From Obrimoposthia wandeli (lineage: Eukaryota), in NCBI GenBank assembly GCA_977020255.1, contig CDROCS010005437.1, positions 1 through 64,000 on the forward strand: DNA of 64,000 nucleotides, in the 5' to 3' direction. The notes under the pieces are model-generated. The model was given only the letters and a program-made list of their open reading frames with translations, searched no databases and was not told where the DNA came from. Below are positions 24,146 through 49,191 of the stretch, in pieces. How positions within the stretch are numbered: position 1 is the first letter of the stretch; every line of letters starts with the position of its first letter. The position numbers and the translations under genes are program-made.

Positions 24146-25456
24146 TTTTTATAACGTATTTTTAGAACGTAACTAGTAGAGCCTTTGGCAAAATGGAAGT
24201 GTAAACATGTTTTTCTTTCTATACTTTTCTACTATAAACTAAATGTACGATGCGCACTTATATTTTACGGTACTGTCTTTTTAAATTAAAATAAGGATGT
24301 AGAAAATAAAATGTTGGGTAAAAACAAACACCATAAATGAATTTCCCGTGTCAAGTTGTGTATTACTGTAGATTTTCAGTAAAAAAGAATATTAATAAGT
24401 GCCTGGGTGAAGCATTTGGCGTGCATTATGCACTAAGTGCGAATTACACGCCTAACTTTTCATCCAAGCACTTATTAATATTATGTTAATCTGAAATTCT
24501 AGAGTAGTACACAACATGATACGGGGAATCCATTTCTGAAAACTGTTTTTACCACACTGATCATCTTCTTTGTTTTCTAGGGTTAGGTTGTGCCTTTTTG
24601 GGACAGACTGATAGGAAGATAACATAGGCAGAGAGATATGGAGAAGGGTAATATAGACGCTATCAACGAAAAATTTTCTATATTGCTGTTGTCTTGTAGC
24701 AATAATTAACTGTTCTATAACGGTGAGAGAGTACGTTAGGGAGATAGATATCAGGACAAGAAACACTGGGTTAGCGCAAGACTGCAGATTGAGATAGATA
24801 GAAGGACTTGAGAGAGAAAGAAAGAACATAAAAATACATTTATTGCATTGCTATTGTTATAATATTTGTCTCTGTTAAATACAATACGATACAATGATGA
24901 TAAATAATTTTAAAAACCACGATACCTAAATTAAAAGATGAAGTAAAACAATTAAATTAATTAAACCCAACTTATCTTTGTCAAATTGAGCGTTGATATT
25001 GACTATATTTTGTATACTCCTTAATCATAAAAAAAGATTGCGAGTTAGTAGGTGGATGTGTCCGGTCTAATCCACCCCCCTCCCCCTCCCCCCGGGGGGG
25101 CTACCACTGTCCTTTAAAACCGTGCATGTGTGTGGAGTGAAATTTCGTGTATTTGTGTGTGAAGTGAAATTTTCTACCCCCCACCAACACTCAAAAAAAC
25201 TAATTAACCCCATAAAACACCCTTTAAAATTGAAAATCTCATAGTGCTCCCTCAGAGTGAGGAAGTGCCTGAGAGGCCATCTAAAGGCCAACGCGTGCCC
25301 TTCAGGCCCGCGGTGGCCTGACGAGCAATACATATATACAGGATAAATTATTTGAATAACCCGCTCTCATTGAACGACAAAAGATGGTTAGTCTATTGTT
25401 TTTGTATATAAACCTCTTTTCATTATTTTTCATAAATCAAGAATCAATAATCAAGA

Positions 25457-27599
25457 ATGCCATTCTACAACAACGTCGATTTGGATCAAGAGACGGAGGT
25501 TCAACTGTATGAGGATCTCTCTCCAGTACAGCAGCGAATGCCACCACCGACGCAGTGCATTGACTTACTTAGTCAAGACTCGTCGGTGGTGAGCAAAGGA
25601 GAAGCAGCAGCAAGAGCAGAGCTGTTAAAAGAAGAAGCACCATTGGCCAGCTCAACTCCAAGAGAAGAACCAATGAACGTGAGAGGTGGGGTACAGAGAT
25701 CTCAATATATCGACCTGTCTAGTCAGGATTCGATTGAGAATTGGGAAGACTGTAATCCCCATCAGAACCCAGAAGCTACTCGTCCAGCAACTTCGGCAGT
25801 AGCTGCAAGGAGATCCAATATCTTCGACAATTTTGAGGCGGCAATCAAACGCCCCTGGAAATTGATCCCGTTGTCTCAGCAGGAGATAGTACTCGCACCA
25901 GACTCAGACGAGGAGCTGTTCACCGATAACGAACCGTCGGATGGGGAGAACGACTTGACTCCATCCAAGGACGAATGGATACAGCCAAGTATCGGAGCCT
26001 CAGGAGCCAACGATTCGATGGTGGCAGAATTGGACGAGAACGAGTGGCGCCTGTTCACCGACGATTGGGATGATCTCACTCCAACTCCGAAAGCGGATAA
26101 TACAGTACCTGAACCATTCAAAAGGCCGAAATCTCCGATATGTACTGTTAGGAGAATAAAGACAACGAATGAGGTTAGACTTCATTTATTTAAAATGTTT
26201 TTTGATTTCATTTTTAGAAACTTCAACTGGATTTGTCACCGTCACTGACCACGGCGGAGAGGCTGATTGAACCGCAGTACTTGCGAGTCAATGTAGCCAG
26301 GAAGATCCAAGGAGTGAGCAGCGATAACTACCCACTCTTGATAAAATTTAGGTAAAGTATTGTAAATTAGATAATAATTTTAATTATTCACATAGGAAGC
26401 CGAATTGGTGGAGGAAATTTGGGAGGAGGCAACTCTCAAACTACCCATGGATAGGAAGCAGGCGGTAGTGAGGAAACCGCGACGCCATCTGGTCAAAACC
26501 CATATAGTCCACAGGAAGAAGGCCAAGTTGGTAAAACAGCCTAACCTGCATGTCATTGAGGTAAATTATTTATATGTTTAAATTTTATTGATGTTTTTAG
26601 CTGCAGGAACCAATACAATTAACTGAGGAGACGTAAGGCAATATTTATCCGTTCCCGCAGAAACGAACGAAGCGGGCTGCTGTACAGAAGACGAGGCGCC
26701 TTAAAAAGGTGAAATCTTGTTTGCTCAAATCGACCGAGGTATCGATAGAGCGGCAGGAAAAACTTCCGTATCAGATTATTGAGGTAACTTTTTAGATATT
26801 TGATTATTTTTTAAATAAATAAATTTTATTAATGTTTTCTTTTGCAGGAACCCGACCGGATAATTGAGGAGACTTGGGGAGAAATTACTCCTTTCCCCAA
26901 AAAGGGACAAAGCGAGCAGAGGTGAAGAAGACGAAGCGCTCGAGAAAATGTTGCACCACAATTCGCCATTCTTCTGAGGTGGTGATTGGACAGCAAGAGA
27001 TTCTACCATCTCCAGTGGACGACGGGCCAATTCTATACGAGAGGATCCCAGTCTCGCCGATCGAGATTAGTCCGCCTCCCAGTCAATGACGCCTACAGGA
27101 GACAGTACGGGCTTCATTATATACTAGTCAAAATTTGGCTAGGGCTTGGGAGACTGCTTCTCCTCGTCTAACAACCAGCCAGAACCTGAAGAGGGCCGGG
27201 GATGAAGCTGGATTGGACGAATTCCTGTCGGAACTGGATACACCGGCAATGCTTCCAGATTCGCGAGGGCAATAGGATGCCGTCTCATGTCAGCTTCAGC
27301 GTGAGAAGGAGGAGAAACTGAAGAAAGCTCCGCGGAAGAGGAAGGCTACTACTTCTATGTCAGGGCCATCGACATCGGCTGCATCTCCTCCCAAAATGTT
27401 GCAGCAACTATTGCCAAAACCTCAGGGAACGGTAATTACTGCACAACAACCGGTGAAGCCGAAAAAGAAACTTGGCCGGCCAAAGAAGAAAGAGCCAGTA
27501 CCGCTTTCTCCAATTAAACGCAGTCGAAGGGATTTTGATGAGGATAATCCCAATGATGACTTTGTAAAGATTTTTAAAAATATAATTTATAAAAAATAA
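25457..27599 (+). pseudogene. five-exon Polinton gene: SIM-like motifs, acidic region, repeated basic exons, AT-hook-like motif
   Basis: Introns 26174-26217, 26352-26395, 26561-26606, 26784-26847; motifs CIDLLSQDS, YIDLSSQDS, EWRLFTDDWDDL, KKKLGRPKKK; stops and frameshifts in exons 2, 4 and 5. Confidence 0.75.
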
Positions 27600-27942
27600 T
27601 TTCATGTGTTTTTTTCTTCTTCTTAATATTTATTTAAAAAAACTTTAAAAATTTTAAATTTATTTTACAAATTTAGTAATATTAAAATACTATCTTTAAG
27701 TTTATTAAAATATCAATATGAAAAATATAGTTAACTTATTCGAATGTGATTGGATTAATACGGAATAATTCTACATTAAATTTTTTTTAGGTTTAATTAG
27801 AAATGCAATGATTAGTTATAGATTTATTAAACTTTCATTTGATAAATAAAAATATATCATATAATTGAATGTGATTGGATTAAAAATATCTTAAATTTAT
27901 ATATATATAGATTCAAATTTATTAACCTCTTCATAATTAAAA

Positions 27943-28410
27943 ATGGAATTTATTAAAATGAAAAGTCTCGTGACGAAGATTGAGGAAAACATCAGGAGAA
28001 ATGAGAAGAAAGGAGATTTAAGAAAGAGGGTCCTCAATCAGAATCTCTACGCTGCTGTCGCGACCGAGTGGAATCTTCGGGTGGAGATACAAGATAAGCG
28101 GCTAGCAGAACGAAAACGGATCGTAGAGTGGAACAAAAAGATCGAATTGGAAAAAAAAAACGGTCTGTTACGGGTAATGGGCAAAAAGGTGGCCCCACTA
28201 CTATCGAGACTGCCGAGGGGCCCAAAACTGTACACGGCGATGACGTAAGAGTACTGAAAAAGTAGGCGGACCTACCCAAAGTTCTAATGACGAAACCGAG
28301 ACCCCAAGCAGCTACTGTTACTGCTACCGAGGACCAGCAGCAACTATACAAAGATAGAGACCCGGACCTACGTAAAGTAGAAGAGGCCCCTATGGGGACT
28401 ATGAAAAATT
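27943..28410 (+). CDS. small basic coiled-coil Polinton protein, unknown function
   Basis: MKSLVTKIEENIRRNEKKGDLRKRVLNQNLYAAVATEW... is conserved in copy A2 (41976-42167, minus). C-terminus frameshifted. Confidence 0.5.
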
Positions 28411-28469
28411 GATTGCTTTCACATTAATAAATGTTTGATAATAATAATAAATAATAATAATAATAATAA

Positions 28470-30267
28470 CAAATATAATACTGATATCCCAGTTAATGTA
28501 ACAGATGAAGAAATTTTTAAAAATCCTTTTGTAGATGTAATTTATAGGAACAAAAATGAGGGGACTCAGGTCAACTTAATTTTGCTCAAACATAATAAAA
28601 AATTCCATTATGCTGCAATTCCCAGTTTAGATCGTCTTCTAAATTTAGATAATGGAGCCTTACCGGTTAGGATAAGGTGTAAGTGGTGTCATAGATGTTT
28701 GCATGGATTCCGATCCGAGCTCTCTTACAGCAAACATCTGACATTATATTCACTGAACCCTGATAACAATACGCTAAACAGCATGCCTAAGGATAAGGAT
28801 TAAGAATTCAGGGATTGGGCAAAATGCATACCCGTGGAATTCAGGGTGTATGCAGATTTTGAGTCAATTTTAGCATTGCACAACCAGTATGAGAGTATTC
28901 ACCTACCGGCTTCGGCAGGACTACTATTCTTATGCCCCAATATTACACAGTATCATAAATTTTCCGGTCCAAATTGAATTTTAGATTTTATGTTGAAATT
29001 AAAAGAATTAGGAACAACCATTGTCAAACCGTGGTATGATCTTAATGCTCATCAAGCAATGATCATGACAGGTATAGACTGGGTTAATTTTAATTCTTGT
29101 AGATTATGTTATTTGTGTGTAACAAAGTCTAAGTTAGTCAGAGATCACGATCATGTTACGGGGTGATACTTGGGAGCGGCGTGCAACCTTTGTAACCTTG
29201 GCCGTCGACTCCATAAAAAGCCACGCATTCCCATCGTGTTTCATAACCTCAAAGGATATGAATTGCATCATATACTTAAATATGCGTTGGGTACATTAAG
29301 CTCTTGGGAAATTTCATGTATACCTCAAACTTCAGAAAAATATTCATCTTTAACTGCATATACTGAATTCTGTAGTTTAAGATTCATAGATTCTCTACAG
29401 TTTTTGAGCAAGTCTTTAAAAAATTTAACGGCATCTTTAAATGCATGGCCAATCACACAGTCAGTGTTCCCAGATTCGGTTAAGGGGATTTTTTTGTATA
29501 AATTTGCGAAAACCTTTGCAGTTTTAGAAAATACAACTGAAATCCAACCCATAACTGAATTTGAGGGTGTAGGTCTTCAAGAATATAATGAGGCCCGTAC
29601 ATTTTGAGAGAATAATTGTCGAAATCTTCTAGAATATATGCTTTATTATATGAAGTTAGACATTTATCTTTTAGCTGATGTTTTGAGTCCTTTCGTGAAA
29701 TCTTTAGCAGAAGATGGGCTAGACCCCATGCATTTCTTTAGTTTACCTGGTCTTTCATGGGCAACAGCAATAAAAACTCTTAAAATTAATATTGAGTTAC
29801 TGCAAGATCCCGCGATGTATCAAATGTATGATTATGGTATACGCGGTGGAATGACTTTTGTCAACAAACATCATGTTGTCAAAAAAATCAATCCACGGAG
29901 ATTCTGTACATCGACATTAATAATTTGTATGGGTGGGGGCTTACTCAACCTCTACATCATGCCAACTTTAAGTGGGTTTATGATGAGGAAGAGTTGAATA
30001 AGTTTATGACAGATTTGGCTACTGTTGATACAGTTTCATCAGACGTCGGCTATTTGGTTGAGGTTGACTTAACAATCCCTTCCAATGTGCATGATAAATT
30101 AGAGGATCTTCCAGTAGCGCCTGTTCATCAATGCCCACCTAATTCAAAGGTTAAGAAATTATTGTTAACCCATGAAGACAAGTTGAATTGTGTTGTGCAT
30201 TGGCGGCTTCTTCAATTCTACTTAAAGTTGGGAGCGAAAGTTACTCGAATTCATCGTGCTATATCAA
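28470..30267 (+). pseudogene. polB: protein-primed DNA polymerase B (family A), truncated at both ends
   Basis: VYADFES (Exo I), VRDHDHVTG..LGAACNLCN (endonuclease VII-like), FHNLKGY (Exo II), FIDSLQFL, IRGGMTFV, motif A region; ends at a deletion junction with the penton ORF at about 30265. Confidence 0.9.
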
Positions 30268-30502
30268 ACCCGATCACAACTTCAATTGCATTTTCATTAT
30301 CAACTTCTTTTGTAAATGAAATATGTGAGTTTTTTCTGATTGTAATTGGAGAATAATAAAAAGGAAATTCTGTTAAAGCCGCTTCCCATTCTCCTTGGAG
30401 ATTTATAGGATTTTCCCAATCGATAATAAAGCTACTAGCGTCATTATCTGGTTGAATTTTCGGACATCCGTTACTAGGTAAAACCATATACATAGACTTC
30501 AT
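30265..30502 (-). pseudogene. minor capsid (penton) N-terminal fragment
   Basis: MYMVLPSNGCPKIQPDNDASSFIIDWENPINLQGEWEAALTE resembles the N-terminus of Polinton minor capsid proteins. Confidence 0.7.
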
Positions 30503-30507
30503 ATTAC

Positions 30508-31487
30508 ATTAGATGCTGATATCTAATTTATTTGATATTACTTTTAGTTCTTACTCGTAAAATTTACCGTGAATGATATTATTATCAGCATCTTTAATAG
30601 TATACATTATTGGATTACTCTTTTGATCAATTTTACTTATACAAAATATTTCATCGCTCCAAATCGGATCAATGTTTTTAATAAATGGAGTAGAGCTAAT
30701 TTTCGAAATTCGAACATATTCGTTTTTCTTATATTTAGCTTTTTTAATATTTTCTTTTTTATTCCTGTCCATCCAAATATCCATAGAGCTTTTATTAGTA
30801 ACATCAACAGGTCTCATTCCCTTGAGACCTCTATGTTCAGAGTGATTATATGCATGTATTATTTTAGGTAAAACTTGGATCCATTTTTTATTTCCTTCTT
30901 TTGTGAAATACCTTTTTTACTCGATCTCTTAAAGTACGATTAAATCTTTCTACTACTGCTGCTTTGTACATCGAAAACACTGAGTAGTGATTTATATTAT
31001 TTTGTTTAAATAATGATTGAACTTGATTATTATAAAATTCTTTTCCTAAATCAGTTTGCACATTTTGTGGAATGTCCTCTTTTAAAATTTCTTTAATGGC
31101 TTCAAGCATAGCTATTAAAGACTTTGCTTTAACTGGAATTGCACGAGCAAACCTGCTAAATACATCAATACATGTTAAAATATATCGATATCCCTTATTA
31201 AGAGAAGAATATGGGATCATCTCCATCAAATCCATTTGCCATAAATTATTAGGACCGCTGGTTTTGTAAGCTCTAGTTGGAAACCTTCTTCTCATCGGCT
31301 TGTTCAGACTGTAGGCTAACTGGTCGCTCAGCCATTTCTGCGTTTTCTTGTAATTTTGTTTTGTTCTTTTGGCTAATTTTGAAAGTCCTGTGTAGCCAAT
31401 TGGATCTTTTGGATTGAACCATATCTTCTTCATTACAACAATTTGAATAGAAAGAAAATTTAAGTTTAGGTAAAGAAGGGCTAGCAC
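30508..31487 (-). pseudogene. int: retroviral-type (RVE) integrase, frameshifted
   Basis: LWQMDL, YILTCIDVFSRFA, VQTDLGKEF, AAVVERFNRTL (D-D-E triad); C-terminal YVRISK...WSDEIF...GKFYE in the next frame. Confidence 0.92.
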
Positions 31488-31519
31488 CCATATCTTTAGC
31501 TGATTTTAGAAATAATTGT

Positions 31520-31891
31520 TTATGAACGTGTCGCAGCTATAATACTACTGATAATTGAAGCAACAACTGGAATAACAGCCCCTATGAAACCACCATTCTG
31601 TTTAAGAATAATATTTCGTTTCCTTTTTTTACTTTTTACATTAGCAATATCTAGAAGAGTTTTTCTATATTTCTTTAATATATTTTTCCGTTTTCCAACT
31701 TTTACTCGACCCAAAACTATATTATACAAAACATATAATAAATCATCTACAACAAAAGATCGAAATGCTTTAAGAATAATCATTCTCTTATGAAAAGAGA
31801 CTTTGACCAAAGCTTTAAAATATGGTATGCTTCTTTGTATTTTCTTCCTTTAAAAAAGGTTCAATTTGAATATTGTTTATATTCGAAGCCA
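31520..31891 (-). CDS. small basic virion-core-like protein ending in GG-F amphipathic peptide (adenovirus pX-like)
   Basis: K/R-rich body then KQNGGFIGAVIPVVASIISSIIAATRS; one frameshift near the 5' end. Confidence 0.6.
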
Positions 31892-32039
31892 TTTAAGTTT
31901 TCTTTTATTTCTAACTACAGATTTGATTAATTTATTCACTTCTTTTTTCTTAATGAATCCTTTTTTTTGATTTCTTAGATTTTACTTTACGTTTTTACTA
32001 TCAACTTCTTAAAGGGCATTGCAGATTTATTTTTTATAT

Positions 32040-32675
32040 TTATTCTCTATTTGTTTATAAACAGTTACTCCCTTAGAATTAAATATGTCTGTTAAAACAC
32101 GTAAATCATCTGGGCAAGCTTGTGTAAAGTTAATAAATATATACCCATGTGCATGTTTAGCAGCATCGTGGAATCAATCAACTAAAAAGTTCTTATTTAG
32201 GGGAAATGCCTGTCTGGTCACGAAATACAACAACTGTTTGATCTCTAGGATTTTTAAATAAAACTAAGTAATGTACATTAAGATTTCTTGTTCTATGGTG
32301 ACCTCCTTGGTGAAAAAGATTTTGAGTGATAAATATAACTGTTACTTCACGATGTCTTGCAATCTTTGTAAATAAATTATTAAAGTTCGATTCCTTGTTA
32401 GCTTTCTGATACAAATCATCAATTATTATTACATCTTCTTTTTTCAATCTTTCACACCAATTTGCATCAAATCCTTCAATAAATTGTATTACCTTCAACT
32501 TGCAAACTTCTGTTTTGGTTAACCCGCTTTCCCCTCCTCCACCATGATGCCAATACATATTTTTGAAACTAGATTTGAAAAGAGATTCATTTTGCAACAA
32601 TTTACAGACGAAATGTGTCTTTCCACTTCCACTAGGGCCAACTATTTGAAATACAGCATTATTATTTAGCTCCAT
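32040..32675 (-). pseudogene. A32/FtsK-like DNA packaging ATPase (family A)
   Basis: Walker A GPSGSGKT, Walker B VIIIDD, ARHREVTVIFITQNLF, YLVLFKNPRD; frameshift near the C-terminus. Confidence 0.92.
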
Positions 32676-32712
32676 TGCATATACTCTTTCATTTTTAATA
32701 TTGTTTATATTA

Positions 32713-33357
32713 TCATAGAAGTTTCCTTATTGAAATGTACAATGTTAGAGCTATTGTAGATGAAATACAAAAATTAATTAATGAATATTTGGCTATAATT
32801 TTATTTATTTGTGTACGATTTCTAAATTCTCGAATAACGTGTGATCTAACCAATATTTCAATGTTATCTCTTGTTATATCATTATTTTTTAATTCTGATA
32901 AAATTTCAACAATGTCTGGATAATCAAAATTTTTCAATCCCAATATCATAACTTTACCACTGGAAAATATATTTACACATAGCAGTTTAAACTTCAAATA
33001 ACTGAGAGCAGGAAACATTTCTGGTTAAAACATGCATTCTTCTTTCATTTTCTCTGCATTTTTAAAAAGATTTATCTGTTTCCCAAGATTAGCCGAAATC
33101 GTGATTGATTGTATTGCATTGATTCGAATTTCAAATAGTAAATTGAACCCAAGCATTGGTATTTTGCATCCCATAACACGACAATTTCCTAAAAGAATTC
33201 AATATGAAAATAAAATAAAAAACTAACCTGTAGGAAAAATAACAACTGTGAAATTGTCAAACTTTTTCACATATTGTCTCGGCTTCCATTCATTGAATGG
33301 TAAGTACGAAACATCATCTTCTATTCTACCTTTATAATTTATATTTACGAGTTTCAT
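32713..33357 (-). pseudogene. divergent TATA-binding-protein-like gene, two exons
   Basis: Exon 33357-33228, 39-nt GT-AG intron, exon 33188-32713 (606 nt). Both TBP repeats recognisable: LVNINYKG...TVVIFPTGNCRVMGCK and IQSITISANLGKQINL...F*PEMFPALSY...VNIFSSGKVMILGLK. Premature TAA at 33025-33027 where TBP has Glu. Confidence 0.8.
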
Positions 33358-33603
33358 TAGACTAAAATTGTATTCTGTAAATTCTTTATATATGTCTGAA
33401 CCTGCTTTTTTATTGCACGTTTCTTGTAATTATCTTGCAAACCTATTATAATTGAATGATATATTTCTTCCAATCAAATTTGATTTTAAATATGGATTTA
33501 GCCCAATCAAATTCAATGCTTTAGTTATATTAACCAATGAGATTCATGTCTTTGTTAGAAATTAGTATAAAAGAATGCGCCATTGGAGGAAAAATCACAG
33601 TAA

Positions 33604-34032
33604 ATGCATTCATATCAAAGACTATTATCAATGATGGACGATTGTCAACGGATATTAAGCGGTGACGAAGATTTAGAAATGTTTGAAGAATCGGAAAAGG
33701 ATATGTATGAAGAAGTGAAACAATATTTCAAATACAAAGTCAGATTCTTGAAGAAGGCTCAACTGATTGTTTTAGTAAATTCTGCGACTATTGAAAGAAG
33801 AAAGTTCAGCTATTATTTATCAAATATTCAAAAACCAGATTTTCAATATCTTAAACAGAAAGTTGAAAAGGCAGTTCCAAATTTTAATTTCAATAAGAAC
33901 GAATTTTATATCGGAGGACCCTTTGAGTGGGGCCAATATGTTGTTTTATGTTTAATAAATGGTTTGAAAATAATTTTGACTCGTATTTTGTTTTTCTCCT
34001 CTAAATTATATAGATCTATTTTTCTCTTATAA
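33604..34032 (+). CDS. hypothetical Polinton protein, weakly PB1-like
   Basis: 142-aa ORF divergent from the TBP-like gene; IERRKFSY...DFQYLKQKVEKAVPNF...EFYI recalls the basic PB1 fold by eye only. Confidence 0.35.
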   Translation: MHSYQRLLSMMDDCQRILSGDEDLEMFEESEKDMYEEVKQYFKYKVRFLKKAQLIVLVNSATIERRKFSYYLSNIQKPDFQYLKQKVEKAVPNFNFNKNEFYIGGPFEWGQYVVLCLINGLKIILTRILFFSSKLYRSIFLL

Positions 34033-35715
34033 ATCTGACCTAAATATTTAACAAAAAACATGTAGTAATTTATTAATCTTTCTTAAAATTAGTAGTAATA
34101 TATTATTTGAAATCTCGTCTGCGATAAGCAGCAGGGAGCAATATGGATTCCCGTGGTCTTCTCTAATCACTTTTGAGATTCGCGGTAAATTTCAAAGTAA
34201 ATTAAAAAATATGTGCCCCCCTCCTATTCGTTGCTTTAACATTTTTTTGTTAAAATTTCCCTACACACATACACGAAATTTCACTCCACACACATGCACG
34301 ATTTTAAAGGACAGTGGTAGCCCCCCGGGGGAGGGGGGTGGATTAGACTGGACACATCCACCTACTCGAGTTGTCATGGCTAGTTTTCTCAGACTAGTGT
34401 TGTAATATTTTGAGGAAAAATTAACCTTCAGATATTGAAACAAATTATGGTATGCCATTCAGTAAGTCCTATTCTGTTAGAAACTCACAAGTTAAGGCCA
34501 ATTCCTAAGTGACACCAACAATAATGAGCGCATCACTAAATGCATATGAATATATTGAACCAGGATAAGAACAAAATATTTGCTTTTAGACAGTGAAAAC
34601 TGACAAAATTCACAACTTTGTAGAATAACTAAAACTGACGAAATAGATTACAATTGCCCCATCAGAGGTTATAGAATATCCATTCAAGTTAAAATTTAAT
34701 ATTAGTATCTTCGATATCAATAACTTTAATATGCTATCATCTGGCAAGAAAAGATTTCATCAAAAGCAGAAATAAGAAATTTCAGGTAAAATATATATGT
34801 TTTTTACTAAAATAAGTTGCTATTTCTACATTTCATTTATTTTGTTTTATGTAGTAAACTGTTTCATTTACCGAAAAGCCACTATAATAAATTAAGAGTT
34901 CCAAAGAATTTATAAAAAACATCATACAATTAGCTTTCTCATACATTAATATTTCGTTACCACGATTCAACTCATTTCTAAAAACTTACAAAATTAAAAT
35001 ATATTTCAAATTTACTGATATTTTTATGTAAATTTACACAAATATTTATCTATTAATTTTATTCATTATTAAAGTGAACATGTGATTTTCAAATATTTTA
35101 TAAATGTCATTTTTACTTGCTTTAAACAACATATAGAGGGAAACTCAATAAGAACATTCTATCAATGACTTCTCCAAATTGACAATTTTTTTAATCTTCA
35201 GAAAGGCGATCCTTATAGCACTAAATTATGTTTTCTTCAGTGTTATTTCACTATTGATTTAGCTTTCGATTTGTGAATTCTCATTTGGACTGGGCTTAAA
35301 AATGGCCCGTCCCAAATCTTAAACTGAAGAGAAAATAATTAATATTAATAATAGAACCAAAGTATTAAAATCACAATCAATGTCAAAAATATTAAAATGG
35401 ATTTGTGGGCCTTGAGAAGCACAGCAATATAAATGAGAAGAGTAATTTAGTCAAAATTGATTGAAAGAGTACAATAAAAGTTTCCAATATTCTTGGAAGA
35501 AGCCAGTGGATAGAGCAAAAGCAGAAGAAGAAAATATAGGTAAGAAACTGAATTCTTATAGTTCAAAAATCATTTTGATCGCAAAGAACGAGAAGACACT
35601 GAAACTGTTTCGTTAAATTCAAGGAACAACATCAAGCAGGAAGGACCAAGTAACCGAATCGGTCGAGGCTTTCCAAGCAGCCGAAGTAAATCGCCGATAA
35701 CATATTAACTCTAGA

Positions 35716-38145
35716 CAAGGCTGGATTAATAGTCTCGTAGGCTCTCTAACCTTTTTAACTCGTCGACCCTTTATGACCTAATTATCTTATTATCGACCCA
35801 TTTAAGTTTAATGTAAAGATTAAATAATTTAATAATCAAAAAAAGTAACTGGTATGTCAATATTTATTTGTTACAATAAATCTCATTAATGAGATGGTTG
35901 TGGTTGATGAGCAGCGGCAAGACTATCAATATTAGGTTGAAAATTGGTAAGCTTAAGTCTTAAATCTCCACGGTTTTCCAGGTTCAATCTATTCCTCTGT
36001 TTTGTCAAAATGGCGTTAGCATGGCTAAAACCAGCTTCAACCATATACGACGTTGGGAATGCAAGTAAGAAAGGCTCAGCTGTAGCCCTGAGCTTGGGAT
36101 ACTTTGTAGCAATATTGATGTTTTTCCAATATTCACTTATGTTTCCTTTTTTAAATAAGACTTTAGCTTCGAGATCTACACTTTTCATAATCGTTTTCCT
36201 CACACAAATTTGCAAACAGTCGTGAATTGAGAGGAGAAGTTTTGATTTTATTAATTGATCTGATGCAGACTTTTAAAGCTTCATGTAGTTCTCCACTTAG
36301 TTTTTTAGCTACAAGATGTTGCCTGTGTAAGACACAGTGAACAGTGCGCACTGTAGGAACTTTCTCTTTGAGAAAGGCAGAAAATCCTCTATACCGGCCT
36401 ACCATAGCTGGTGCACCATTAGTAGCTACTGCACTAATATTTTCAAGAGTAATAAATAAGAAATATATTTAAAATATAAAATTTATTAGACCACCAGGGG
36501 TCGATATCGACCCCGTTGGGGACCCCTGCTCTAGACAATTGGAGAACTCATGTGTCTTAAAACCCGATATTATTATTGATTATATTTTAATCACTAAATA
36601 AATCTATAACAAATTAAAGAATAAATTATTGGATTGAAGGTTACTTTTGAAAATAAATGTATTTAACCATTTACTATTTGTAAACATTATATTCTAAAGG
36701 TTTCGTTTGAAATAATCAGCTCATAATGGCCGATGAATATAAAAGATAAATAAACTAGCTGAATGGGTACCATGTTCTGCTATCAATCTTAATTTAGTTG
36801 GAGTAGCTGCTGCAGAATGCTGTTCGGAGGCAGTTAATTCTTTTGGACTTTTACAATCGGTATATAACTTTTTCTTTACACCGCCACAAAGATGGTTAAA
36901 ATTAAAAGAAAGCATGAGAGATAAATCTTTAATTGTTCAAAGTTTATCACAGATGAGATGGTCAGCACGAAGTGATGCTGTAAAAGCATTTCATACGAAC
37001 TATTTTGAAATTCGCCAGACATTACTAGACATTGCTAACTGTGAGCATCAACCTCCAGCTGTTGCTCATTTGTCAAATTCGTTAGCTAAGAATTTTGATC
37101 ATCTTGAAACGATATTAACCCTCACTGTGCTATGTATTTAATACAGTACGTATTATCATCCTGCATTATCGGGTTTCCATGTCGCTCTAGGTTTTCATAT
37201 TGATTTTGTTTATAGACATTAAAATAACTTAGATAATACGTATGTCATCACCATGGAAATCGATGGGAAATCCCCTGTCTAAAAACGAGTTAACTCGGTT
37301 CCCGTCACTGTATGCGTATTTGTCGGGACCGAGTTATCTCGGTTCCCGCGTATTGAGTTGCATATGGAATGATTTGCTTGAAAATATTAACCTTGTAAAT
37401 AAATCGGTGCAACAGCTTGGTTTAGAAGTACGCACTATAATAAAATTATATGATGGTCTTATTTTCCATTTTATTGAAGTACGAAATAAATTTGGCGAGT
37501 TTGAAACCAAAGCAAAAGAACTGTCGTCATGGAACACAAAAATCCACGCAAAATACCCAGAAACATTTTTTTGAAGAAACTGAAATTTCCGAATAAATTC
37601 AAAGTGGAAATGAAAACACTTCGAGTTGCCTACACAACGTCTTCGATAGGATATGCCCAGTGATCATATGTCAATTAAAGCTCAATAGTTAGTAGCAGCT
37701 TACCCAACAGATTTTAAAGAGTTCTTTGTGAAAGAGCTCCATTTATTTTCAAAAATCTGTGACGTGAAAATGTTGGCTTCCGAAGTGATTACCAAACAAA
37801 TAAAAGAAAAATTAGTTACCAGATTCCCAAACGTTCACATCGCGTTGAGAATCTACTTGTCCGTAATTGGTTCAAATGAAGAAGCAGAATGATCATTCTC
37901 AAAACTTAAAATAATTAAGAACTATTTGCGTACGAGTATCGGACAAGGCAAATCATCATCACTGGCGCTACTTTCAATTGAAATAAATGTCTATTGAAAA
38001 TGTCTTTTGAAAATGTAATATTTGAATTTGCAAATAAAAATGTTAACAATAAAGGTTTATCATTATTTTTAAATTTCGTAGGCCCTTTAGTTTTCGTAAG
38101 CCCTAGGCAAAGTGCCTTCTTTGCCTTTAGGCTAATCCGGTATTG
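35716..38145 (+). mobile_element. hAT transposon (ZMYM1/Tip100-like), decayed
   Basis: 8-bp TSD ACTCTAGA at 35708-35715 and 38146-38153; imperfect TIRs CAAGGCTGGATTA / TAATCCGGTATTG; transposase fragments LNLVG, RWSARSDAVKA, SFSKLKIIKNYLRTS. Confidence 0.85.
35738..36528 (-). mobile_element. Buster/Charlie-type hAT, internally deleted, nested in the previous hAT
   Basis: End GTTGGGGACCCCTG followed by CTCTAGAC; ATNGAPAMVG, HCVLHRQHL, FPTSYMVEAGFS, DLRLKLTNFQPNI...QPSH. Other TIR is degraded. Confidence 0.8.
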
Positions 38146-38873
38146 ACTCTAGAGAAGAAATCCCTAAACATACCTATTTTAATTAGAGACGATTTTCAAG
38201 TTTCATTGTGATTGTATGACAACTCTCTGTTCCTAAAGTTAGTAAAGAAATCGAGCCATTTTAGTGTACACAGTTTCCTTTTAGTAACCTTTTGTCAAAT
38301 GGTAGTGTAATAAATATTATAAACAATAGTGACGAAGTGCGTTTCATCTCAGGAAAATTATTAAATCCATTTTGCGTGAGAGGTACCAAAATAAGAGTAA
38401 ACTGAATGATACGTAGGCAGAGACGCCAGCTACATCGATCATTTTGTGTGCTGTTATCAGAAAAATATATGGTGTGAACCAGAATGATATTCGTCCAATT
38501 TTTTGAACTAGTCATTGCCAGACTATTTATTAAATTGTACAAGTATTAGCCTAACTGACTAGAGATATATTCCAACAAAACACAACAACCGTTTTGGAGA
38601 TTTACAAAATGTATCTGCACAACCTACTACAACACATACTACTAAGCAATAAGCTAGATAAAACACTACCTTCAGACATGACAATAGGTGCTGTCGCTAC
38701 AGAACTCACGATTAGGGCCTCCCGTGGATGACTCTAGAGAACGATTTTATGAAACCGAAACGCCTATTTTCAACACAATACCGCTACAATGCTGATTGAT
38801 GAAAATCACAACGGTTGGTGATTGTTTCTAACACATTATTCCGCTACAAATAGGTCGGGTTCTCATTCGATTT

Positions 38874-41460
38874 AAATAGCCGACGTCTGATGAAACTGTA
38901 TCAACAGTAGCCAAATCTGTCATCAACTTATTCAACTCTTCCTCATCATAAACCCACTTAAAGTTGGCATGAGGTAGAGGTTGAGTAAGCGCCCACCCAT
39001 ACAAATTATTAATATCGATGTACAGAATCTCCGTGGATTAATTTTTGACAACATGATGTTTGTTGACAAAAGTCATTCCACCGCGTATACCATAATCATA
39101 CATTTGATACATCGCGGGATCTTGCAGTAACTCGATATGAATTTTAAGAGTGTTTATTGCTGTTGCCCATGAAAGACCAGATAACTAAAGAAATGCATGG
39201 GATCTAGCCCATCTTCTGCTAAAGATTTTACATGAAAGGACTCAAAAACATCAGCGAAAAGATAAATGTCTAACTTCATATAATAAAGCATATATTCTAA
39301 AGGATTTTGACAATTATTCTCTCAAAATGTACGGGCCTTACACCCTCAAATTCAGTAATGGGTGGGATTTCTGTAATATTTTGTAAATCAGCAAAGGTTT
39401 TCGCAAATTTATACGGAAAAATCCCCTAATAATTAACCAAAGTTAGGAACACTGACTGTGTAATTGGCCATGCATTTAAAGATGCCGTAACATTTTTAAA
39501 AGACCCGCTCAAAAACTGCAAAGAATTTATGAATCTTAAGCTGCAGAATTCAGTATATGCAGTTAAAGATAAATATTTCTCTGAAGTTTGAGGTATACAT
39601 GAAATTTCCTTTGAGATTATGAAACTCGATGAGAATGCGTGGTTTTTTAGGGAGATGACGGCCAAGATTACAAAGGTTGCACGCCACTCCCAAGTATCGC
39701 CCCGTAACATGATCGTGATCTCTGACTAACTTAGACTGGGTTCCACACAAATAACATAATCTACAAGAATTAAAATTAACCCAGTCTATGCCTGTCATGA
39801 TCATTGCTTGATGAGCATTGAGATCCTACCACGGTTTGACAATTGTTGTTCCTAATTCCTCTAATTTTAACATAAAATCTAAAATACAATTTGGACCGGA
39901 AAATTTATAATACTGGGTAATATTGGGGCCTAAGAATAGTAGTCCTGCCGAAGCCGGTAGGTGAATACTCTCATACTAGTCATGCAATGCTAAAATTGAC
40001 TCAAAATCTGCATACACCCTGAATTCCACGGGTATGCATTTTGCCCAATCCCTGAATTTTGAATCCTTATCCTTAGGCATGCTGTATAGCGTATTGTCAC
40101 CAGGATTCAGTGAAAATAATGTCAGATGTTTGCTGTAAGAGAGCTCGGATCGGAATCCATGCAAACATCTATGACACCACTTACACCTTATCCTAACCCG
40201 TAAGGCTCCATTATCTAAATTTAGAAGACGATCTAAACTGGGAATTGCAGCATAATGGAATTTTTTATTATGTTCGAGCAAAATTAAGTTGACCCGAGTC
40301 CCCTCATTTTTTTCTCCTATAAATTACATCTACAAAAGGATTTTAAAAATTTTCTTCATCTGTTACATTAACTGGGATATCAGTATTATATTTGAATACA
40401 TTAATACTCAAGTTATTAAGATGTTCAAATCTTGATATCGCAGTTAATTTAACAGGAAAATCTATTCCATGATACTGCAATTCATTTAAAAAAGGGGTAT
40501 ATTTACTGACACGATCTCTATGCTCAGTAATCCCTTTTGAGGATGGCCAACACGCTATACAGAAACCAAAGGTTATAACTGTTTAGTATGTTAACAATGG
40601 AACGTGAAAGTTGAAGACATCTAGGTGAAGGAATGTATGAACTCCCCAAAAGATATATCATGTCAGTGAACTTTGTTAGAACAACGATAACATTGTGAAT
40701 TCTAACTAGAGTCTATCCACTACTTAACTCGCTATAATAAGCAATTTTTTATCTATGTTTCTTCCAATTTCAGTTACAAAATTATCATAGAAAACAGTTG
40801 CTTTATGTGAAATTACCAAGTTTTAGTCTCCTCATTGACATTTTCAAACTGCTCTGTTGCGCAAAATTGAACCTTAGCATGTCCTAATTTAGTCACTTCT
40901 GATTTTAAAGACTTTCAATATTTGAATCTACACCTACGTTTAAAAATATTTCAATTCCTAATGGCACCTTAACTATAACGTATTTATTATTTAGGTGATA
41001 CTCTATAGTAGCACCGTTTTCCTACGTTTTTTGGGTGGGACCTTATTAAGAAATTGGCCTTGCCTCTTTCTTCCTACAGTCGCTGACAAACCTCCCCCTA
41101 ATTGAACGGGAAGACAACTATTTATATTAACAGTTGAGGCAATCGCAGCTGATGTGGAAGGTGCTGCTATTGGTGATGCTGCCGATGTTGAGGCAATTGC
41201 TGTTGATGTAGACGATGCTGCTGTAGTATATGCTACCGCAGATGATGAGACAGTAGATGCTGCATTTGAAGTAGCAGACATTGCCGACGAAGAAGCGGCT
41301 GTTGTAGAGGATGATGCTGCTGAAATAAATATATTTTAAAAATAAATATATATTTTTAAATTATTACCTCTAAGACGTGCAAACATCTATGTAGTCACTC
41401 ACGATGGGGGAGGCATAGCTATCGTAGCGGACGACGGCTGTATCACGGTATTTCCTGAAT
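38874..41460 (-). pseudogene. polB: pPolB of copy A2 with spliced Ala/Ser/Thr-rich N-terminal exons
   Basis: Intron-like GT-AG segments at about 41322-41370 and above 41458; A/S/T-rich exon leading to PPKKRR then ENGATIEY...KVQFCAT; same Exo and endonuclease VII-like motifs as A1; motif A (LYIDINNLYGWA); truncated at 38874. Confidence 0.85.
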
Positions 41461-42865
41461 AAAAAATTAAAAAATAAATATATATAATTACAATTTTAAA
41501 AAATAATCAGAAAAATAATAGTAATTTTTAATTTGCACTGTTGCGCAAAATTGAACCTTAGCCTGTCCTAATTTAGTCACTTCTGATTTTAAAAGACTTT
41601 CCATATTTGTATCTACACCTACGTTTAATAAAATTTGATTTCCTAATGGCACCTTAACTATAACATATTTATTATTTAAGTGATACTCTATAGTAGCACC
41701 GTTTTCTCTACGTTTGTAGAGGCTGCATTTGAGGTAGGAGCCACTCAATATCCAGTAGCTGATGGCCATCTTATAAAAAATATTATAAATAAAATTGTTT
41801 ATATTTAGTTTGGTTATGTAAAATATTTAAAATATAACACTATAAAAAATCCATAAAATCAAAAGAAAAAATTTTTTTTTCGAATTTTTAAGAAGAACCC
41901 TCTTTAGGTTTAATCGGGAGGATTTTCTTTCTTGCGGCTCAGCGATTTTCTTCCGTCTCCACACTTATTTTTTTCCTATTCAACCTTTCTATTCCAGTCC
42001 AGTATCCGACGTCGTTCTGCTAGCCGCCTGTCCTGAATCTCCACCCGACGATTCCACTCGGTCGCGACAGCAGCATATAAATTTAGATTGAGGACCCTCT
42101 TTCTTAAATCTCCTTTCTTCACATTTCTTTTTATATTGTATTCTATCTTCGTCACGAGACTTTGCATTTTAGAAAATTCTATTTTTGAACCTATTTATAT
42201 AAATCTGAAATATTTTTAATCCAATCACAGTCAATTAAATGATATTTTTTTATTTATCAAATTAGAGTTTATAATTTAATAAATCTATAACTAATCATTA
42301 CATTTATATATAAATAAACTTATATTTTTGAAATTAAAGAAGTTTAAAGAATTATATTATTCCTAATTAATCCAACCAACATTGAATAAGTTTTTTTTTT
42401 CAAATGAGACTATTTTTTAATAAACTTAAGATTGTATTTTAATATAACTAAATTTCGTAAATATATCTAAATTTTTAAGTTATTTTTAAAAGTTAAACTA
42501 AAAACATAACACGTAAAATTATTTTTTATAAATTATATTGTTACATAGCACGTAAAATTATTTTTTATAAATTATATTGTTTCTAAAACACTACACAAAG
42601 TCATCGTTGGGATCATCCTCATCGATATCCCTCCGACTGAGTGGTATAGGAGTAAGCGGCACTGGCTCCTTATACTTCTTTGGTCGCCCTGGCTTTTTTT
42701 TGGCTGAACCCGTTGCTGTGCAGCAATTGGCCTTCTCTGAGGTTTTGGCAGTTAGTTGCCGCAACTTTTTCGGAGGAGGTGCAGCCGATGTTGATGGCCC
42801 GGACGAAGAAGTTGTAGCCTTCCTCTTCCGCAGAGCTTTCTTCAATTTATCCTCCTTCTCACGCT

Positions 42866-43001
42866 ACACAATGAGTACTCAGTTCGTACTTCCATTTTTT
42901 CAAATCGGATTTTCCCGATGTCCCAGACACTCCCGTTGTCGCACCAGGCACAGGAAAATCCGATTTGAAAAAAGGAATTACGAACTGAGTACTCATTGTG
43001 T
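42866..43001. repeat. left terminal hairpin of family B
   Basis: Arms 42866-42915 and about 42953-43001 are reverse complements (about 50 bp, few mismatches) around a ~37-nt loop. Confidence 0.93.
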
Positions 43002-43138
43002 CGTAAAATTACAAAATTGCCAAATTACAAAATTTGGCAATTTTTCCATATTATTTAAATTTTGTAAAGTTTCCAAAATTTAAAAAATATATAAAAATTA
43101 TTTTTTTTACTAAAAAAGATAAATTAAATTTTTTAAAA

Positions 43139-45900: not shown

Positions 45901-46005
45901 AAGTTTAGATTTTATAATTTTATAAAATTTGAACATATTAGGAAAATATTTTTTCCTATTTTAAAATTATAACAGTTTTTTATAAATATAAAAAAATTGT
46001 TTTAT

Positions 46006-46809
46006 TCATTCTTTTGCTTCTAATTCTTTTACTCTCTTCATTAAAAAATCTATATTCTTTTCGAGTTCTGAATTTTTCATATTCTTATTCTTATTCTTAT
46101 TCTTATTCTTAGTATTTATAACTGTACCTTTAACACTATTATTCTCATATTCGATCTTTTTTCTCTTATGTTCTTGAGACATTGTTTCTTTATTTCTTTC
46201 CTTAATTTCACATATTTTATTTTTTACTTCTCTAAGAATTTCCTTTGACATTTCCATTTCATCGTTACTTATTTCATTATCTTTCAAACAATTCTGATGA
46301 AATAGAAATAATTTATTTTTACCTTCTTCAAGTGCATGAATTAATTTTTGATACTTCATCTTATTTCTTTTAAACAAACTAAAATTCATAATCTGCTGCA
46401 TCAAAGTACTACCTATAGGTGTTAATGCTAAAGTTATAGCTGGAAGAGCTACAATAGAAATTCCAGCGGTTACTAATCCACTGATAATTATACCTCCTAT
46501 TCCACAAATAGCTGTAAAACTATAATTTGTATATTTCACTATAGCATCAGCTTTGCACCATTTCTTATGTATTTTTTTATAATGTGAAATTTTATCAGTT
46601 AGAAAAATAAGATCATTTTTAAAATTTTCAATTTTCAATTTATTTACAGCTTTTTTATATTCTAAAGTTTCAATATCTGACAATGGCTTTATAGAAAAAG
46701 TATCATAATTATCATAATTATTCATATAAGCAACAGAACCAGAATTTTCATTCAAATTAGGATAAATATTTTGAATATTTTGAATTTCTGAATTTTCCAA
46801 ATCTTCCAT
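46006..46809 (-). CDS. coiled-coil protein with hydrophobic hairpin (putative membrane-active protein)
   Basis: Intact 267-aa ORF; segment FTAICGIGGIIISGLVTAGISIVALPAITLAL flanked by basic coiled coils. Confidence 0.55.
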   Translation of the reverse strand: MEDLENSEIQNIQNIYPNLNENSGSVAYMNNYDNYDTFSIKPLSDIETLEYKKAVNKLKIENFKNDLIFLTDKISHYKKIHKKWCKADAIVKYTNYSFTAICGIGGIIISGLVTAGISIVALPAITLALTPIGSTLMQQIMNFSLFKRNKMKYQKLIHALEEGKNKLFLFHQNCLKDNEISNDEMEMSKEILREVKNKICEIKERNKETMSQEHKRKKIEYENNSVKGTVINTKNKNKNKNKNMKNSELEKNIDFLMKRVKELEAKE

Positions 46810-46812
46810 TTT

Positions 46813-48276: not shown

Positions 48277-48285
48277 ATATAATTC

Positions 48286-49137: not shown

Positions 49138-49191
49138 AACTTTCGTTTTTTAAAAAATCTTGGATTTTTAAAATTTTTAAATGTAAAATTT

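What the first reader, a model, noticed from the sequence alone, without database searches (positions are those of the whole stretch)
32713..33357. A Polinton carries its own intron-containing TBP-like gene
Seen: removing a 39-nt GT-AG intron (33189-33227) gives a ~200-codon minus-strand ORF inside the TIR/TSD-bounded element A1. It has both halves of the TBP saddle: TVVIFPTGNCRVMGCK aligns with TBP TALIFSSGKMVCTGAK, and F*PEMFPALSY...VNIFSSGKVMILGLK with YEPELFPGLIY...LLIFVSGKVVLTGAK. Three of the four DNA-intercalating Phe positions look retained (VIF, EMF, NIF). The single stop is a plausible GAA>TAA change. The ORF track misses this because of the intron and stop. Known: TBP homologues occur in some giant DNA viruses but are not in the standard Polinton gene set (pPolB, INT, ATPase, PRO, MCP, mCP). 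Inference: this lineage encodes an alternative or decoy TBP to redirect host Pol II initiation. I am not aware of a description of this, but could not check.
Basis: partly seen in the sequence, partly recalled or inferred. Interest (0 to 1): 0.92.

Follow-up and report, generated by a model that had tools for sequence, protein, structure and literature searches.

The report
Polinton-encoded compact TBP homologue, dead copy
A decayed virus-like transposon (Polinton/Maverick) in this window carries a broken copy of a small TATA-binding-protein gene that is a regular, conserved gene of its Polinton lineage, whose other genes sit behind one uniform TATA-like promoter box.

Summary
On the minus strand at 33357-32713 there is a gene in three collinear pieces: a 39-nt GT-AG stretch and one in-frame stop interrupt it. 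The pieces match, in order and without gaps, a family of more than 225 metagenomic proteins of about 145-200 aa. All 30 members tested hit Pfam TBP. Their profile finds only TBPs in the PDB (best E 1.4e-24). An AlphaFold model (pLDDT 97) matches only TBP structures.

In every related contig long enough to judge, from several samples, the gene lies among Polinton genes (pPolB, rve integrase, A32-type ATPase, adenain), in two fixed gene orders. One of these orders is the window's. The 39-nt stretch is a real intron: an otherwise intact relative (L033) has a 40-nt GT-AG stretch at the same codon and phase.

The window copy is dead, and so is its 9.3-kb element A1 (TIRs, 6-bp TSD, frameshifts, stops, capsid genes deleted).

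New here: about half of the relatives' genes, but never the TBP-like gene, carry TATAAACA about 35 nt before the ATG. This suggests that the protein reads the element's own promoters. That function is inferred, not shown.

Prior mention found: one figure label (Starrett et al. 2021).

The parts
32713..33357 (-). TBP-like gene, broken copy (one in-frame stop in the coding part; one intron). One part, first base to last, stop codon included.
32869..33357 (-). The part of the gene that aligns with the family profile (positions 3-157 of 176), i.e. the TBP-like domain. The ~50 codons 3' of it have no family counterpart.
   Evidence: (three collinear hits).
33189..33227 (-). 39-nt GT-AG intron, phase 1, inside a Gly codon. 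It contains two stops if read through.
   Evidence: profile position 48 on both sides; relative L033 has a 40-nt GT-AG stretch at the same codon and phase in an otherwise intact element.
33384..33392 (-). TATATAAAG box about 35 nt before the ATG of the TBP-like gene. It is an ordinary-looking TATA box, not the TATAAACA class.
32051..32675 (-). Packaging ATPase gene (Pox_A32 type), broken: 1 frameshift and 1 stop.
   Evidence: PF04665, E 7.9e-07. (71-78% identity to relatives)..
32702..32709 (-). TATAAACA box 34 nt before the ATPase ATG. This is the same position as in the relatives.
32052..32059 (-). TATAAACA box on the coding strand, at the 3' end of the ATPase gene.
31874..31881 (-). TATAAACA box on the coding strand, just upstream of the small conserved gene.
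31562..31843 (-). Small conserved gene (about 98-104 aa in relatives), function unknown. No break seen.
30518..31433 (-). Integrase gene (rve core), broken: 1 frameshift and 1 stop.
   Evidence: PF00665, E 3.7e-13..
30266..30526 (-). Remnant (first ~70-85 codons) of the ~370-440-aa gene that follows the integrase in relatives. The rest, and the capsid and protease genes that follow in relatives, are missing.
28612..30323 (+). 5' part of the protein-primed DNA polymerase B gene, broken (1 frameshift, 4 stops) and lacking its 3' part.
   Evidence: PF03175, E 1.7e-07. (E 3e-138 to L003)..
33604..34032 (+). 142-aa ORF, divergent from the TBP-like gene, between it and the right TIR. No family found.
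25047..34366 (-). Element A1, a 9,320-bp internally deleted Polinton/Maverick. Strand given is that of the TBP-ATPase-integrase block.
25047..25173 (.). Left terminal inverted repeat of A1 (starts AGTAGG...).
   Evidence: I11, I16. (87% over 127 nt; first 40 nt 98%)..
34252..34366 (.). Right terminal inverted repeat of A1.
25041..25046 (.). Target-site duplication CGAGTT, left copy.
34367..34372 (.). Target-site duplication CGAGTT, right copy.

Best explanation
Identity.
The feature is a pseudogenised copy of a compact TBP paralogue (about 145-160 aa in intact relatives). This paralogue is a standing gene of one Polinton/Maverick lineage. The protein keeps the TBP saddle. Its second repeat is complete: both DNA-kinking Phe, and the acidic stirrup that TFIIB contacts in cellular TBP. 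Its first repeat is reduced to its beta-strands, with no long helices and only one of its two Phe.

Proposed mechanism (inferred).
1. In active relatives the gene is transcribed from an ordinary host-type TATA promoter.
2. Its product then acts as the element's own promoter-recognition factor. It binds the TATAAACA box that lies about 35 nt before the ATG of roughly half of the element's genes. These always include the packaging ATPase and the ~410-aa presumed capsid gene.
3. It brings in the host RNA polymerase II machinery through the retained TFIIB-type surface.
This would give a two-tier (early, then late) programme.

What is shown: homology, fold, synteny, the shared intron, the motif with its position and strand bias, and the absence of the motif before the TBP-like gene.
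What is inferred: that the protein binds this motif, and that it recruits Pol II.

In this window nothing works any more: the gene and its element are decayed.

My confidence by step: identity as a lineage-specific Polinton TBP homologue about 0.95; real intron about 0.9; reader of the TATAAACA promoters about 0.5. The overall figure given (0.55) is for the whole statement including the mechanism.
For: Homology and fold:
- The largest piece finds 45 proteins at E<=1e-3 among 1.84e9.
- All 30 aligned relatives hit Pfam TBP, best E 1.2e-25.
- The family profile finds 35 PDB sequences, all TBP, best E 1.4e-24.
- AF2: pLDDT 97.4, pTM 0.86. Repeat 1 is strands only; repeat 2 is complete.
- Foldseek against the PDB: the 44 hits at E<=1e-3 are all TBP, TM 0.66-0.80.

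Window copy:
- It is collinear with the family profile.
- It keeps 25 of the 30 covered highly conserved columns.

Lineage gene:
- Polinton neighbours in contigs from ENA, Logan and JGI samples, in two fixed orders.
- The window has the TBP -> ATPase -> small gene -> integrase order.

Intron.

Promoter class:
- TATAAAC is in 43 of 102 upstream regions, against 3.3 expected.
- 26 of 52 sites lie 30-39 nt before the ATG.
- Of 37 TATAAA-NN boxes at -25 to -50, 31 read CA at NN.
- Independent set: 31 sites on the gene strand, 2 on the other, 5.3 expected.
- 0 of 9 TBP-like genes have it; most of them carry TATAAATA-type boxes instead.
- Window A1 keeps the box 34 nt before the ATPase ATG.
- The neighbouring Polinton B has neither the gene nor the motif.
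- The distant TBP-bearing contig L040 shows CATAAACA/ATAAACA enrichment.

Stirrup and Phe columns are invariant or nearly so. That this stirrup is the TFIIB contact is established knowledge of TBP-TFIIB-DNA structures.
Against: - There are no expression or binding data of any kind.
- The TATAAA core could be read by the host's own TBP, so an element-encoded TBP is not logically required.
- The host organisms are unknown, so TATAAACA could be a host-typical core promoter.
- The co-occurrence test has a single TBP-less control (element B).
- The first repeat lacks one Phe and both helices, so DNA bending and partner binding may differ from TBP.
- The capsid identity of the ~410-aa gene was not shown, so 'late genes' is a label by position.
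- The window copy itself is non-functional.
Confidence: 0.55

Rival explanations
1. Decoy or competitor. The compact TBP does not drive the element's promoters. Instead it competes with host TBP for TATA boxes or for TFIIB. Lacking the first-repeat helices, it would escape host TBP regulators. The effect would be to damp or re-route host transcription in favour of the element.
For: The TFIIB-type stirrup and three Phe are retained. The convex-side helices of repeat 1 are lost.
Against: It does not explain why the element's genes share one precise box at one precise distance while the TBP-like gene alone avoids it. There is no evidence on binding partners.
Confidence: 0.2
2. Non-transcriptional DNA binder. 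The TBP fold is used as an architectural protein for replication, integration or genome packaging, for example binding element ends. The TATAAACA boxes are then simply host-read TATA promoters.
For: TBP-like folds occur in proteins unrelated to transcription (established knowledge). The gene sits next to the packaging ATPase in one of the two gene orders.
Against: The family matches TBP proper by sequence profile (E 1e-24), not just by fold, including the stirrup motif. In the second gene order it is not next to the ATPase. No TATAAACA lies in the A1 TIRs.
Confidence: 0.1
3. The 39-nt stretch is a decay insertion that happens to begin GT and end AG. It is not an intron.
For: A1 is decayed. The other A1 genes show no introns. 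24 of the 26 JGI relatives have the gene as one continuous segment.
Against: L033 has a 40-nt GT-AG stretch of different sequence at the same codon and phase. L033 is an element whose other six genes are full-length single alignments. Without splicing, its gene alone would be frameshifted. Removing the stretch restores exact collinearity in both copies. My rough estimate for GT and AG ends arising by chance is below 1% (inference from base composition).
Confidence: 0.08
4. One-off capture of the host's TBP gene, or a chance resemblance.
For: None found.
Against: More than 225 family members exist. Synteny is conserved in Polinton contexts from several samples. Identity to solved eukaryotic TBPs is only 19-26%. 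The compact architecture is shared by the whole family.
Confidence: 0.01

Closest known systems
Cellular and archaeal TATA-binding protein (Pfam PF00352)
   Same: Sequence-profile homology (E to 1e-25). Two-repeat saddle fold. Complete second repeat with both Phe and the stirrup motif.
   Different: The protein is 145-160 aa instead of a ~180-aa core. The first repeat has no long helices and only one Phe. Identity is 19-26%. It is encoded by a mobile, virus-like element and is not a host gene.
TBP homologues of giant viruses (Nucleocytoviricota)
   Same: A virus-encoded TBP homologue. These are the best hits in the viral structure library, e.g. Heterosigma akashiwo virus 01 putative TBP at E 4e-08.
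   Different: The giant-virus proteins are longer (186-500+ aa), belong to viruses with their own RNA polymerase, and are 8-22% identical. IMG/VR viral contigs hold no member of the compact family. The nearest viral contig examined (L012) is a giant-virus fragment with a canonical 188-aa TBP.
'TBP' gene labelled in maps of mid-size linear dsDNA (MELD) viruses with adintovirus-like PolB (Starrett et al. 2021, PMC8502044, Fig. 5 legend)
   Same: A TBP-like gene in Polinton-related elements. The same legends list TRAF-like genes, and relative L008 carries MATH/TRAF genes beside the TBP-like gene.
   Different: It is only a figure label. Architecture, distribution, intron and promoters are not discussed. 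I could not see the figure or fetch its sequences, so identity with this family is not verified.
TBP-like late-gene factor of beta- and gamma-herpesviruses (UL87/BcRF1/ORF24) with its variant late TATA box (from established knowledge)
   Same: A functional analogy to the proposed mechanism: a virus-encoded TBP-fold protein reads a variant TATA box on a subset of viral genes and brings in host Pol II.
   Different: It is not a relative in any practical sense. Foldseek matches are marginal (E 0.01-0.02, TM 0.32-0.35). Those proteins are much larger, and their motif is different.
TBP-related factor TBPL1/TRF2 (from established knowledge)
   Same: A divergent TBP paralogue used for a subset of promoters.
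   Different: TBPL1 is a host gene that has lost most of the kinking Phe and does not bind TATA boxes. This family keeps three Phe. No comparison was run here.

Membership tests
TBP family (Pfam PF00352) | Profile match above Pfam's gathering score (22.9 bits) | tested here: met
   All 30 aligned relatives pass, best E 1.2e-25; P0004 scores 50 bits. The window's largest piece alone scores 17.8 bits, below the cut-off. The window copy is tied to the family by profile hits of E 1e-30 and 7e-21.
TBP family (Pfam PF00352) | Two tandem repeats forming one saddle | tested here: met
   AF2 model pLDDT 97.4. Foldseek aligns the whole model to TBP chains, TM 0.66-0.80, probability 1.0. Repeat 1 is reduced to strands without its long helices.
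TATA-binding TBP proper | Two pairs of DNA-kinking Phe | tested here: inconclusive
   Three of the four columns are 90-100% Phe in the family and Phe in the window copy. The fourth (first stirrup of repeat 1) is not Phe. This rests on profile alignment only; no structural superposition at residue level was available.
TATA-binding TBP proper | Binds a TATA box and recruits TFIIB and Pol II | not testable with these tools
   Only indirect evidence: conservation of the second stirrup motif and the TATAAACA box before element genes.
Polinton/Maverick | Protein-primed family B DNA polymerase | tested here: met
   PF03175 in A1 and in relatives. A1 holds the 5' part only, broken.
Polinton/Maverick | Retrovirus-like (rve) integrase | tested here: met
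   PF00665, E 3.7e-13 in A1. Also in relatives, some with a chromodomain.
Polinton/Maverick | A32/FtsK-type packaging ATPase | tested here: met
   PF04665, E 7.9e-07 in A1. 71-78% identity to relatives.
Polinton/Maverick | Adenain-like cysteine protease | tested here: met
   Met in relatives: PF00770 in L009, with homologues in L027, L028, L035 and L036. Absent from A1, which has lost that region.
Polinton/Maverick | Double and single jelly-roll capsid proteins | tested here: inconclusive
   Conserved ~370-440-aa and ~405-430-aa genes sit where capsid genes are expected. They gave no hit in the PDB sequences or PHROGs. No fold was predicted.
Polinton/Maverick | Terminal inverted repeats and a 6-bp target-site duplication | tested here: met
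   TIRs at 25047-25173 and 34366-34252; TSD CGAGTT.
Herpesvirus TBP-like late factor (UL87 family) | Sequence or structural membership | tested here: not met
   Only marginal Foldseek matches (ranks 32, 34 and 37; E 0.011-0.018; TM 0.32-0.35). It is cited as a working analogy only.

The most novel reading that the evidence does not exclude
A whole clade of Polintons/Mavericks runs its own two-tier transcription programme. A compact, element-encoded TBP is itself expressed from a host-type TATA box. It then reads a dedicated C-variant box ((T/C)ATAAACA, about 35 nt before the ATG) on the element's packaging and presumed capsid genes. This would be the first basal transcription factor, with a matching promoter code, described for this class of virus-like transposons. 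It would argue that these elements behave as viruses with temporal gene control.
Probability: 0.45. Interest if true: 0.8.

Novelty: new variant of a known kind. Interest (0 to 1): 0.62.

Why it matters
Polintons are usually thought to rely wholly on host transcription, and whether they live as viruses is still debated. A conserved TBP of their own, together with one uniform promoter box that the TBP gene itself lacks, would mean one clade carries a self-contained switch for its packaging and capsid genes. That switch can be tested directly with public transcript data and with structures.

The family is also a naturally minimised TBP, with one repeat stripped to its beta-sheet. That is of interest for how TBP binds DNA and its partners.

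For annotation, these genes are currently auto-named as cellular TBP in metagenomes, which is misleading.

Tried and rejected
Dead ends:
- A second copy in the window: none, by tblastn or by profile.
- Exact-protein look-ups of the window's ATPase ORF and of the last piece of the TBP-like gene: not on record, so no other copies from the host genome could be fetched.
- IMG/VR: no member of the compact family, only canonical TBPs of large viruses.
- Family members that begin at the Met just after the intron site looked like further intron cases. One of those checked (L100) is simply cut by the contig end. The other (L019) is continuous, with one in-frame stop.
- Capsid identity of the ~405-aa gene: no hit in the PDB sequences or PHROGs. 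I ran no further search on it.
- dN/dS: not attempted, because relatives are about 40-50% identical and synonymous sites would be saturated.
- Literature: six further term combinations gave nothing beyond Starrett et al..

Rejected readings:
- Stop-codon reassignment as an explanation of the in-frame stop. Element B in the same window has long ORFs under the standard code.
- The large inverted repeat 27298-30055 / 38874-42865 as A1's TIRs. It is a second, inverted family-A copy.

2. One search tried whether GT-AG stretches could bridge the frame changes in the ATPase, integrase and pPolB genes. This comes close to picking stretches to bridge breaks. It found none, and it kept and printed no sequence.
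3. Piece bounds that abut the stop appear in my tool references, in the output and in notebook entries 1 and 4. Entry 1 also holds two motif strings that read like family majority motifs. I have not repeated any of these here.

Full report
THE GENE AS IT STANDS.
On the minus strand an ATG at 33357 opens a short ORF. It runs into a 39-nt stretch (33227-33189) that begins GT, ends AG and is T-rich at its 3' end. The frame then resumes, is broken by one in-frame stop, and ends at 32713. tblastn with the three pieces finds no second copy in the window.

IS IT TBP-LIKE?
- The largest piece alone gives only a sub-threshold Pfam TBP hit (E 0.003; 17.8 bits against a cut-off of 22.9).
- Searched against 1.84 billion representative proteins, the same piece finds 45 proteins at E<=1e-3 (best 1.1e-9). 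Most are 145-200 aa.
- Thirty of them align into a well-conserved family (alignment A1).
- All 30 pass Pfam TBP (best E 1.2e-25).
- Their profile finds 35 distinct PDB sequences, all TATA-binding proteins. Best is M. jannaschii TBP at E 1.4e-24, and both TBP repeats are matched.
- An AlphaFold2 model of member P0004, built with this alignment, has pLDDT 97.4 and pTM 0.86.
- Foldseek against the PDB returns 44 hits at E<=1e-3, all TBP. TM is 0.66-0.80 over the whole model and identity is 19-26%.
- In the viral structure library the hits are the TBP homologues of giant viruses.

The model shows a compact variant. The second repeat is complete. The first repeat has its strands but not its long helices. 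In the profile alignment, three of the four Phe columns of TBP are 90-100% Phe in the family and Phe in the window copy. The fourth column is not Phe.

THE WINDOW COPY AGAINST THE FAMILY.
A profile built from A1 hits only three stop-to-stop segments among all six frames of the window. They are in order and cover profile positions 3-48, 48-103 and 105-157. The next best hit has E 0.3. The 39-nt stretch therefore neither removes nor adds a profile position, and the stop occupies exactly one. The copy keeps 25 of the 30 covered columns that are at least 80% conserved; the family median is 29 of 31. The last ~50 codons of the ORF have no family counterpart.

THE INTRON.
Most relatives have one continuous ORF: 24 of 26 JGI loci show a single segment, and so do the ENA and Logan loci. 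L033 is the exception. It is a 7.2-kb JGI contig with a 40-nt stretch at 376-415 that has different sequence, begins GT and ends AG. The stretch sits after the first base of the same Gly codon as in the window.

In L033 the ATPase, small gene, integrase and three further genes are each one full-length alignment to relatives. The element therefore looks intact, and its TBP-like gene would be frameshifted unless the stretch is spliced out. The spliced product is 148 aa and matches the profile end to end (176 bits).

Because a relative shares the intron, I joined the window's exon 1 to exon 2 as far as the stop. The result is 97 aa, 94 bits, profile positions 3-103. L033 ranks 11th of 165 in identity to the window copy (47.5%; the closest is 53.1%). 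It ties for the closest ATPase and integrase. I conclude that the intron is real and occurs in some members only.

THE ELEMENT.
- Downstream on the same strand lie a Pox_A32-type ATPase and an rve integrase.
- pPolB fragments lie at 28.4-30.4 kb.
- A1 runs from 25047 to 34366. It has ~127-nt TIRs (87% identical; the first 40 nt are 98%) and a 6-bp duplication, CGAGTT.
- The larger inverted repeat (27298-30055 against 38874-42865) is not A1's TIR. It is a second, inverted family-A copy. That copy continues at 58512-60617 and is split by another Polinton, element B (42866-58511), which has its own TIRs and 6-bp duplication.

A1 is dead. Counts against relatives:
- TBP-like gene: 1 stop in the coding part.
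- ATPase: 1 frameshift and 1 stop.
- Integrase: 1 frameshift and 1 stop.
- pPolB: 1 frameshift and 4 stops in the retained 5' part; the 3' part is missing.
- The gene after the integrase is reduced to its first ~70-85 codons.
- The capsid-region and protease genes are absent.
The frame changes have no GT-AG solution.

A LINEAGE GENE.
A profile search of 5.8 billion proteins gives 225 family members at E<=1e-5. All 120 listed come from metagenomes. JGI names some of them 'TATA-box binding protein' automatically. Every contig long enough to judge shows Polinton genes beside the TBP-like gene. There are two fixed gene orders.
- Type I: TBP -> (small genes) -> ATPase -> small gene -> integrase -> ~370 aa -> ~105 aa -> ~405 aa, with pPolB on the other strand. 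Seen in L003, L004, L005, L008, L022, L023, L033, L039, L040 and the window.
- Type II: ATPase -> integrase -> ... -> ~415-430 aa -> adenain protease -> two small genes -> TBP. Seen in L009, L011, L027, L028 and L036.

A1's ATPase is 71-78% identical to type I relatives, its integrase 54-61%, its pPolB 45-50%, and its TBP-like gene 41-53%. This rules out a one-off host capture.

A UNIFORM PROMOTER BOX (NEW HERE).
- In six relatives' loci the 7-mer TATAAAC occurs in 43 of 102 upstream regions, against 3.3 expected.
- 52 genes have it within 120 nt upstream on the coding strand, and 26 of these at 30-39 nt before the ATG.
- Of 37 TATAAA-NN boxes at -25 to -50, 31 read CA at NN.
- An independent set of 26 JGI loci gives 31 sites on the gene strand, 2 on the other and 5.3 expected, with 14 of the 31 at 30-39 nt.
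- The ATPase gene has the box in all six loci of the first set, and so does the ~405-430-aa gene.
- The TBP-like gene never has it (0 of 9). Most of these genes carry TATAAATA-type boxes instead, some with CCAAT-like boxes further upstream. pPolB lacks the box too.
- In the window, A1 keeps TATAAACA 34 nt before the ATPase ATG, plus two more on the coding strand. Its TBP-like gene has TATATAAAG at about -35.
- Element B has neither the TBP-like gene nor the enrichment. The distant TBP-bearing contig L040 is enriched for CATAAACA/ATAAACA.

HOW IT MOST LIKELY WORKS.
The homology, fold, synteny, intron and motif statistics are shown. The following is inferred. The TBP-like gene is expressed from a host-type promoter. 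Its product binds the C-variant box and recruits host Pol II through the conserved second stirrup, which is the TFIIB contact in cellular TBP (established knowledge). The result would be an early/late programme. The nearest working analogy is the TBP-like late-gene factor of beta- and gamma-herpesviruses with its variant TATA box (knowledge). It is not a relative.

Rivals are a decoy role, a non-transcriptional DNA-binding role, and an insertion in place of an intron. They are weighed in their own sections.

KNOWN OR NEW?
[quoted passage not shown] 2021, PMC8502044, and its preprint). Other searches gave nothing relevant. TBP homologues of giant viruses are well known. I found no description of the compact architecture, the two conserved gene orders, the shared intron, or the promoter box. 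I therefore rate this a new variant of a known kind. The instance in this window is a relic.

LIMITS.
The host is unknown and no other copy from its genome could be fetched. There are no expression data. The capsid identity of neighbouring genes is unproven. The TBP-less control is a single element.

1. I recalled short yeast TBP motif strings from memory in private reasoning. They were used nowhere.
2. One search tested GT-AG bridges across frame changes. None were found, and nothing was kept or printed.
3. Piece bounds that abut the stop appear in tool references, in the output and in notebook entries 1 and 4. Entry 1 also holds two majority-like motif strings.

Noticed in passing
Relatives L003-L005, L008, L009, L011, L020-L045; window 32702-32709, 32052-32059, 31874-31881 (minus strand): An exact 8-mer, TATAAACA, lies about 35 nt before the ATG of roughly half the genes of TBP-bearing Polintons. 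It is strongly strand-biased (31 against 2 in the replication set) and is never found before the TBP-like gene.
   Followed up: yes
window 42866-58511: Element B is a 15.6-kb Polinton of another family. Its TIRs are 97.5% identical over 365 nt, and its 6-bp target duplication is CACGCT on the plus strand (42860-42865 and 58512-58517). It carries long ORFs: an adenain-like protease, an integrase, an ATPase and capsid-like genes. It has no TBP-like gene and no TATAAACA enrichment. It is inserted into a family-A copy.
   Followed up: partly
window 38828-42865 plus 58512-60617 (minus strand); 62140-63998 (plus strand): Two further partial family-A copies. Only the pPolB-side end is kept, so neither holds the TBP-like gene. 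The first, together with A1, forms the large inverted repeat that could be mistaken for giant TIRs.
   Followed up: partly
window 35886-37574: Fragments of a hAT-type transposase (weak Pfam hit to the hAT dimerisation domain, E 0.0012) lie between A1 and the inverted family-A copy.
   Followed up: no
window 10843-14219: A long, G+C-rich tandem array with strong negative GC skew. Self-matches are 90-93% identical at many offsets.
   Followed up: no
L008 854-1858 and 5476-6447; L003 6320-6742: Accessory genes sit beside the TBP-like gene in relatives: two MATH/TRAF-like genes in L008 and a RING-finger gene in L003 (also seen in L033). The Starrett et al. legends list TRAF-like genes in the same figures as 'TBP'.
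   Followed up: no
L040 (JGI Ga0209655_10000188) and L039: A distant branch of the family (36-37% identity; ATPase ~36% identical to A1) still has the type I gene order. In L040 there is enrichment of CATAAACA/ATAAACA instead of TATAAACA.
   Followed up: partly
L019 (source of P0001) and L045: Two relatives' genes are themselves broken: one in-frame stop in L019, and two pieces in different frames in L045. Decayed copies therefore also occur in the metagenomic material.
   Followed up: no
window 33604-34032 (plus strand): A 142-aa ORF with no family hit lies between the TBP-like gene and the right TIR, divergently oriented. Relatives also have a divergent ORF just upstream of their TBP-like gene. 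The two were not compared.
   Followed up: no
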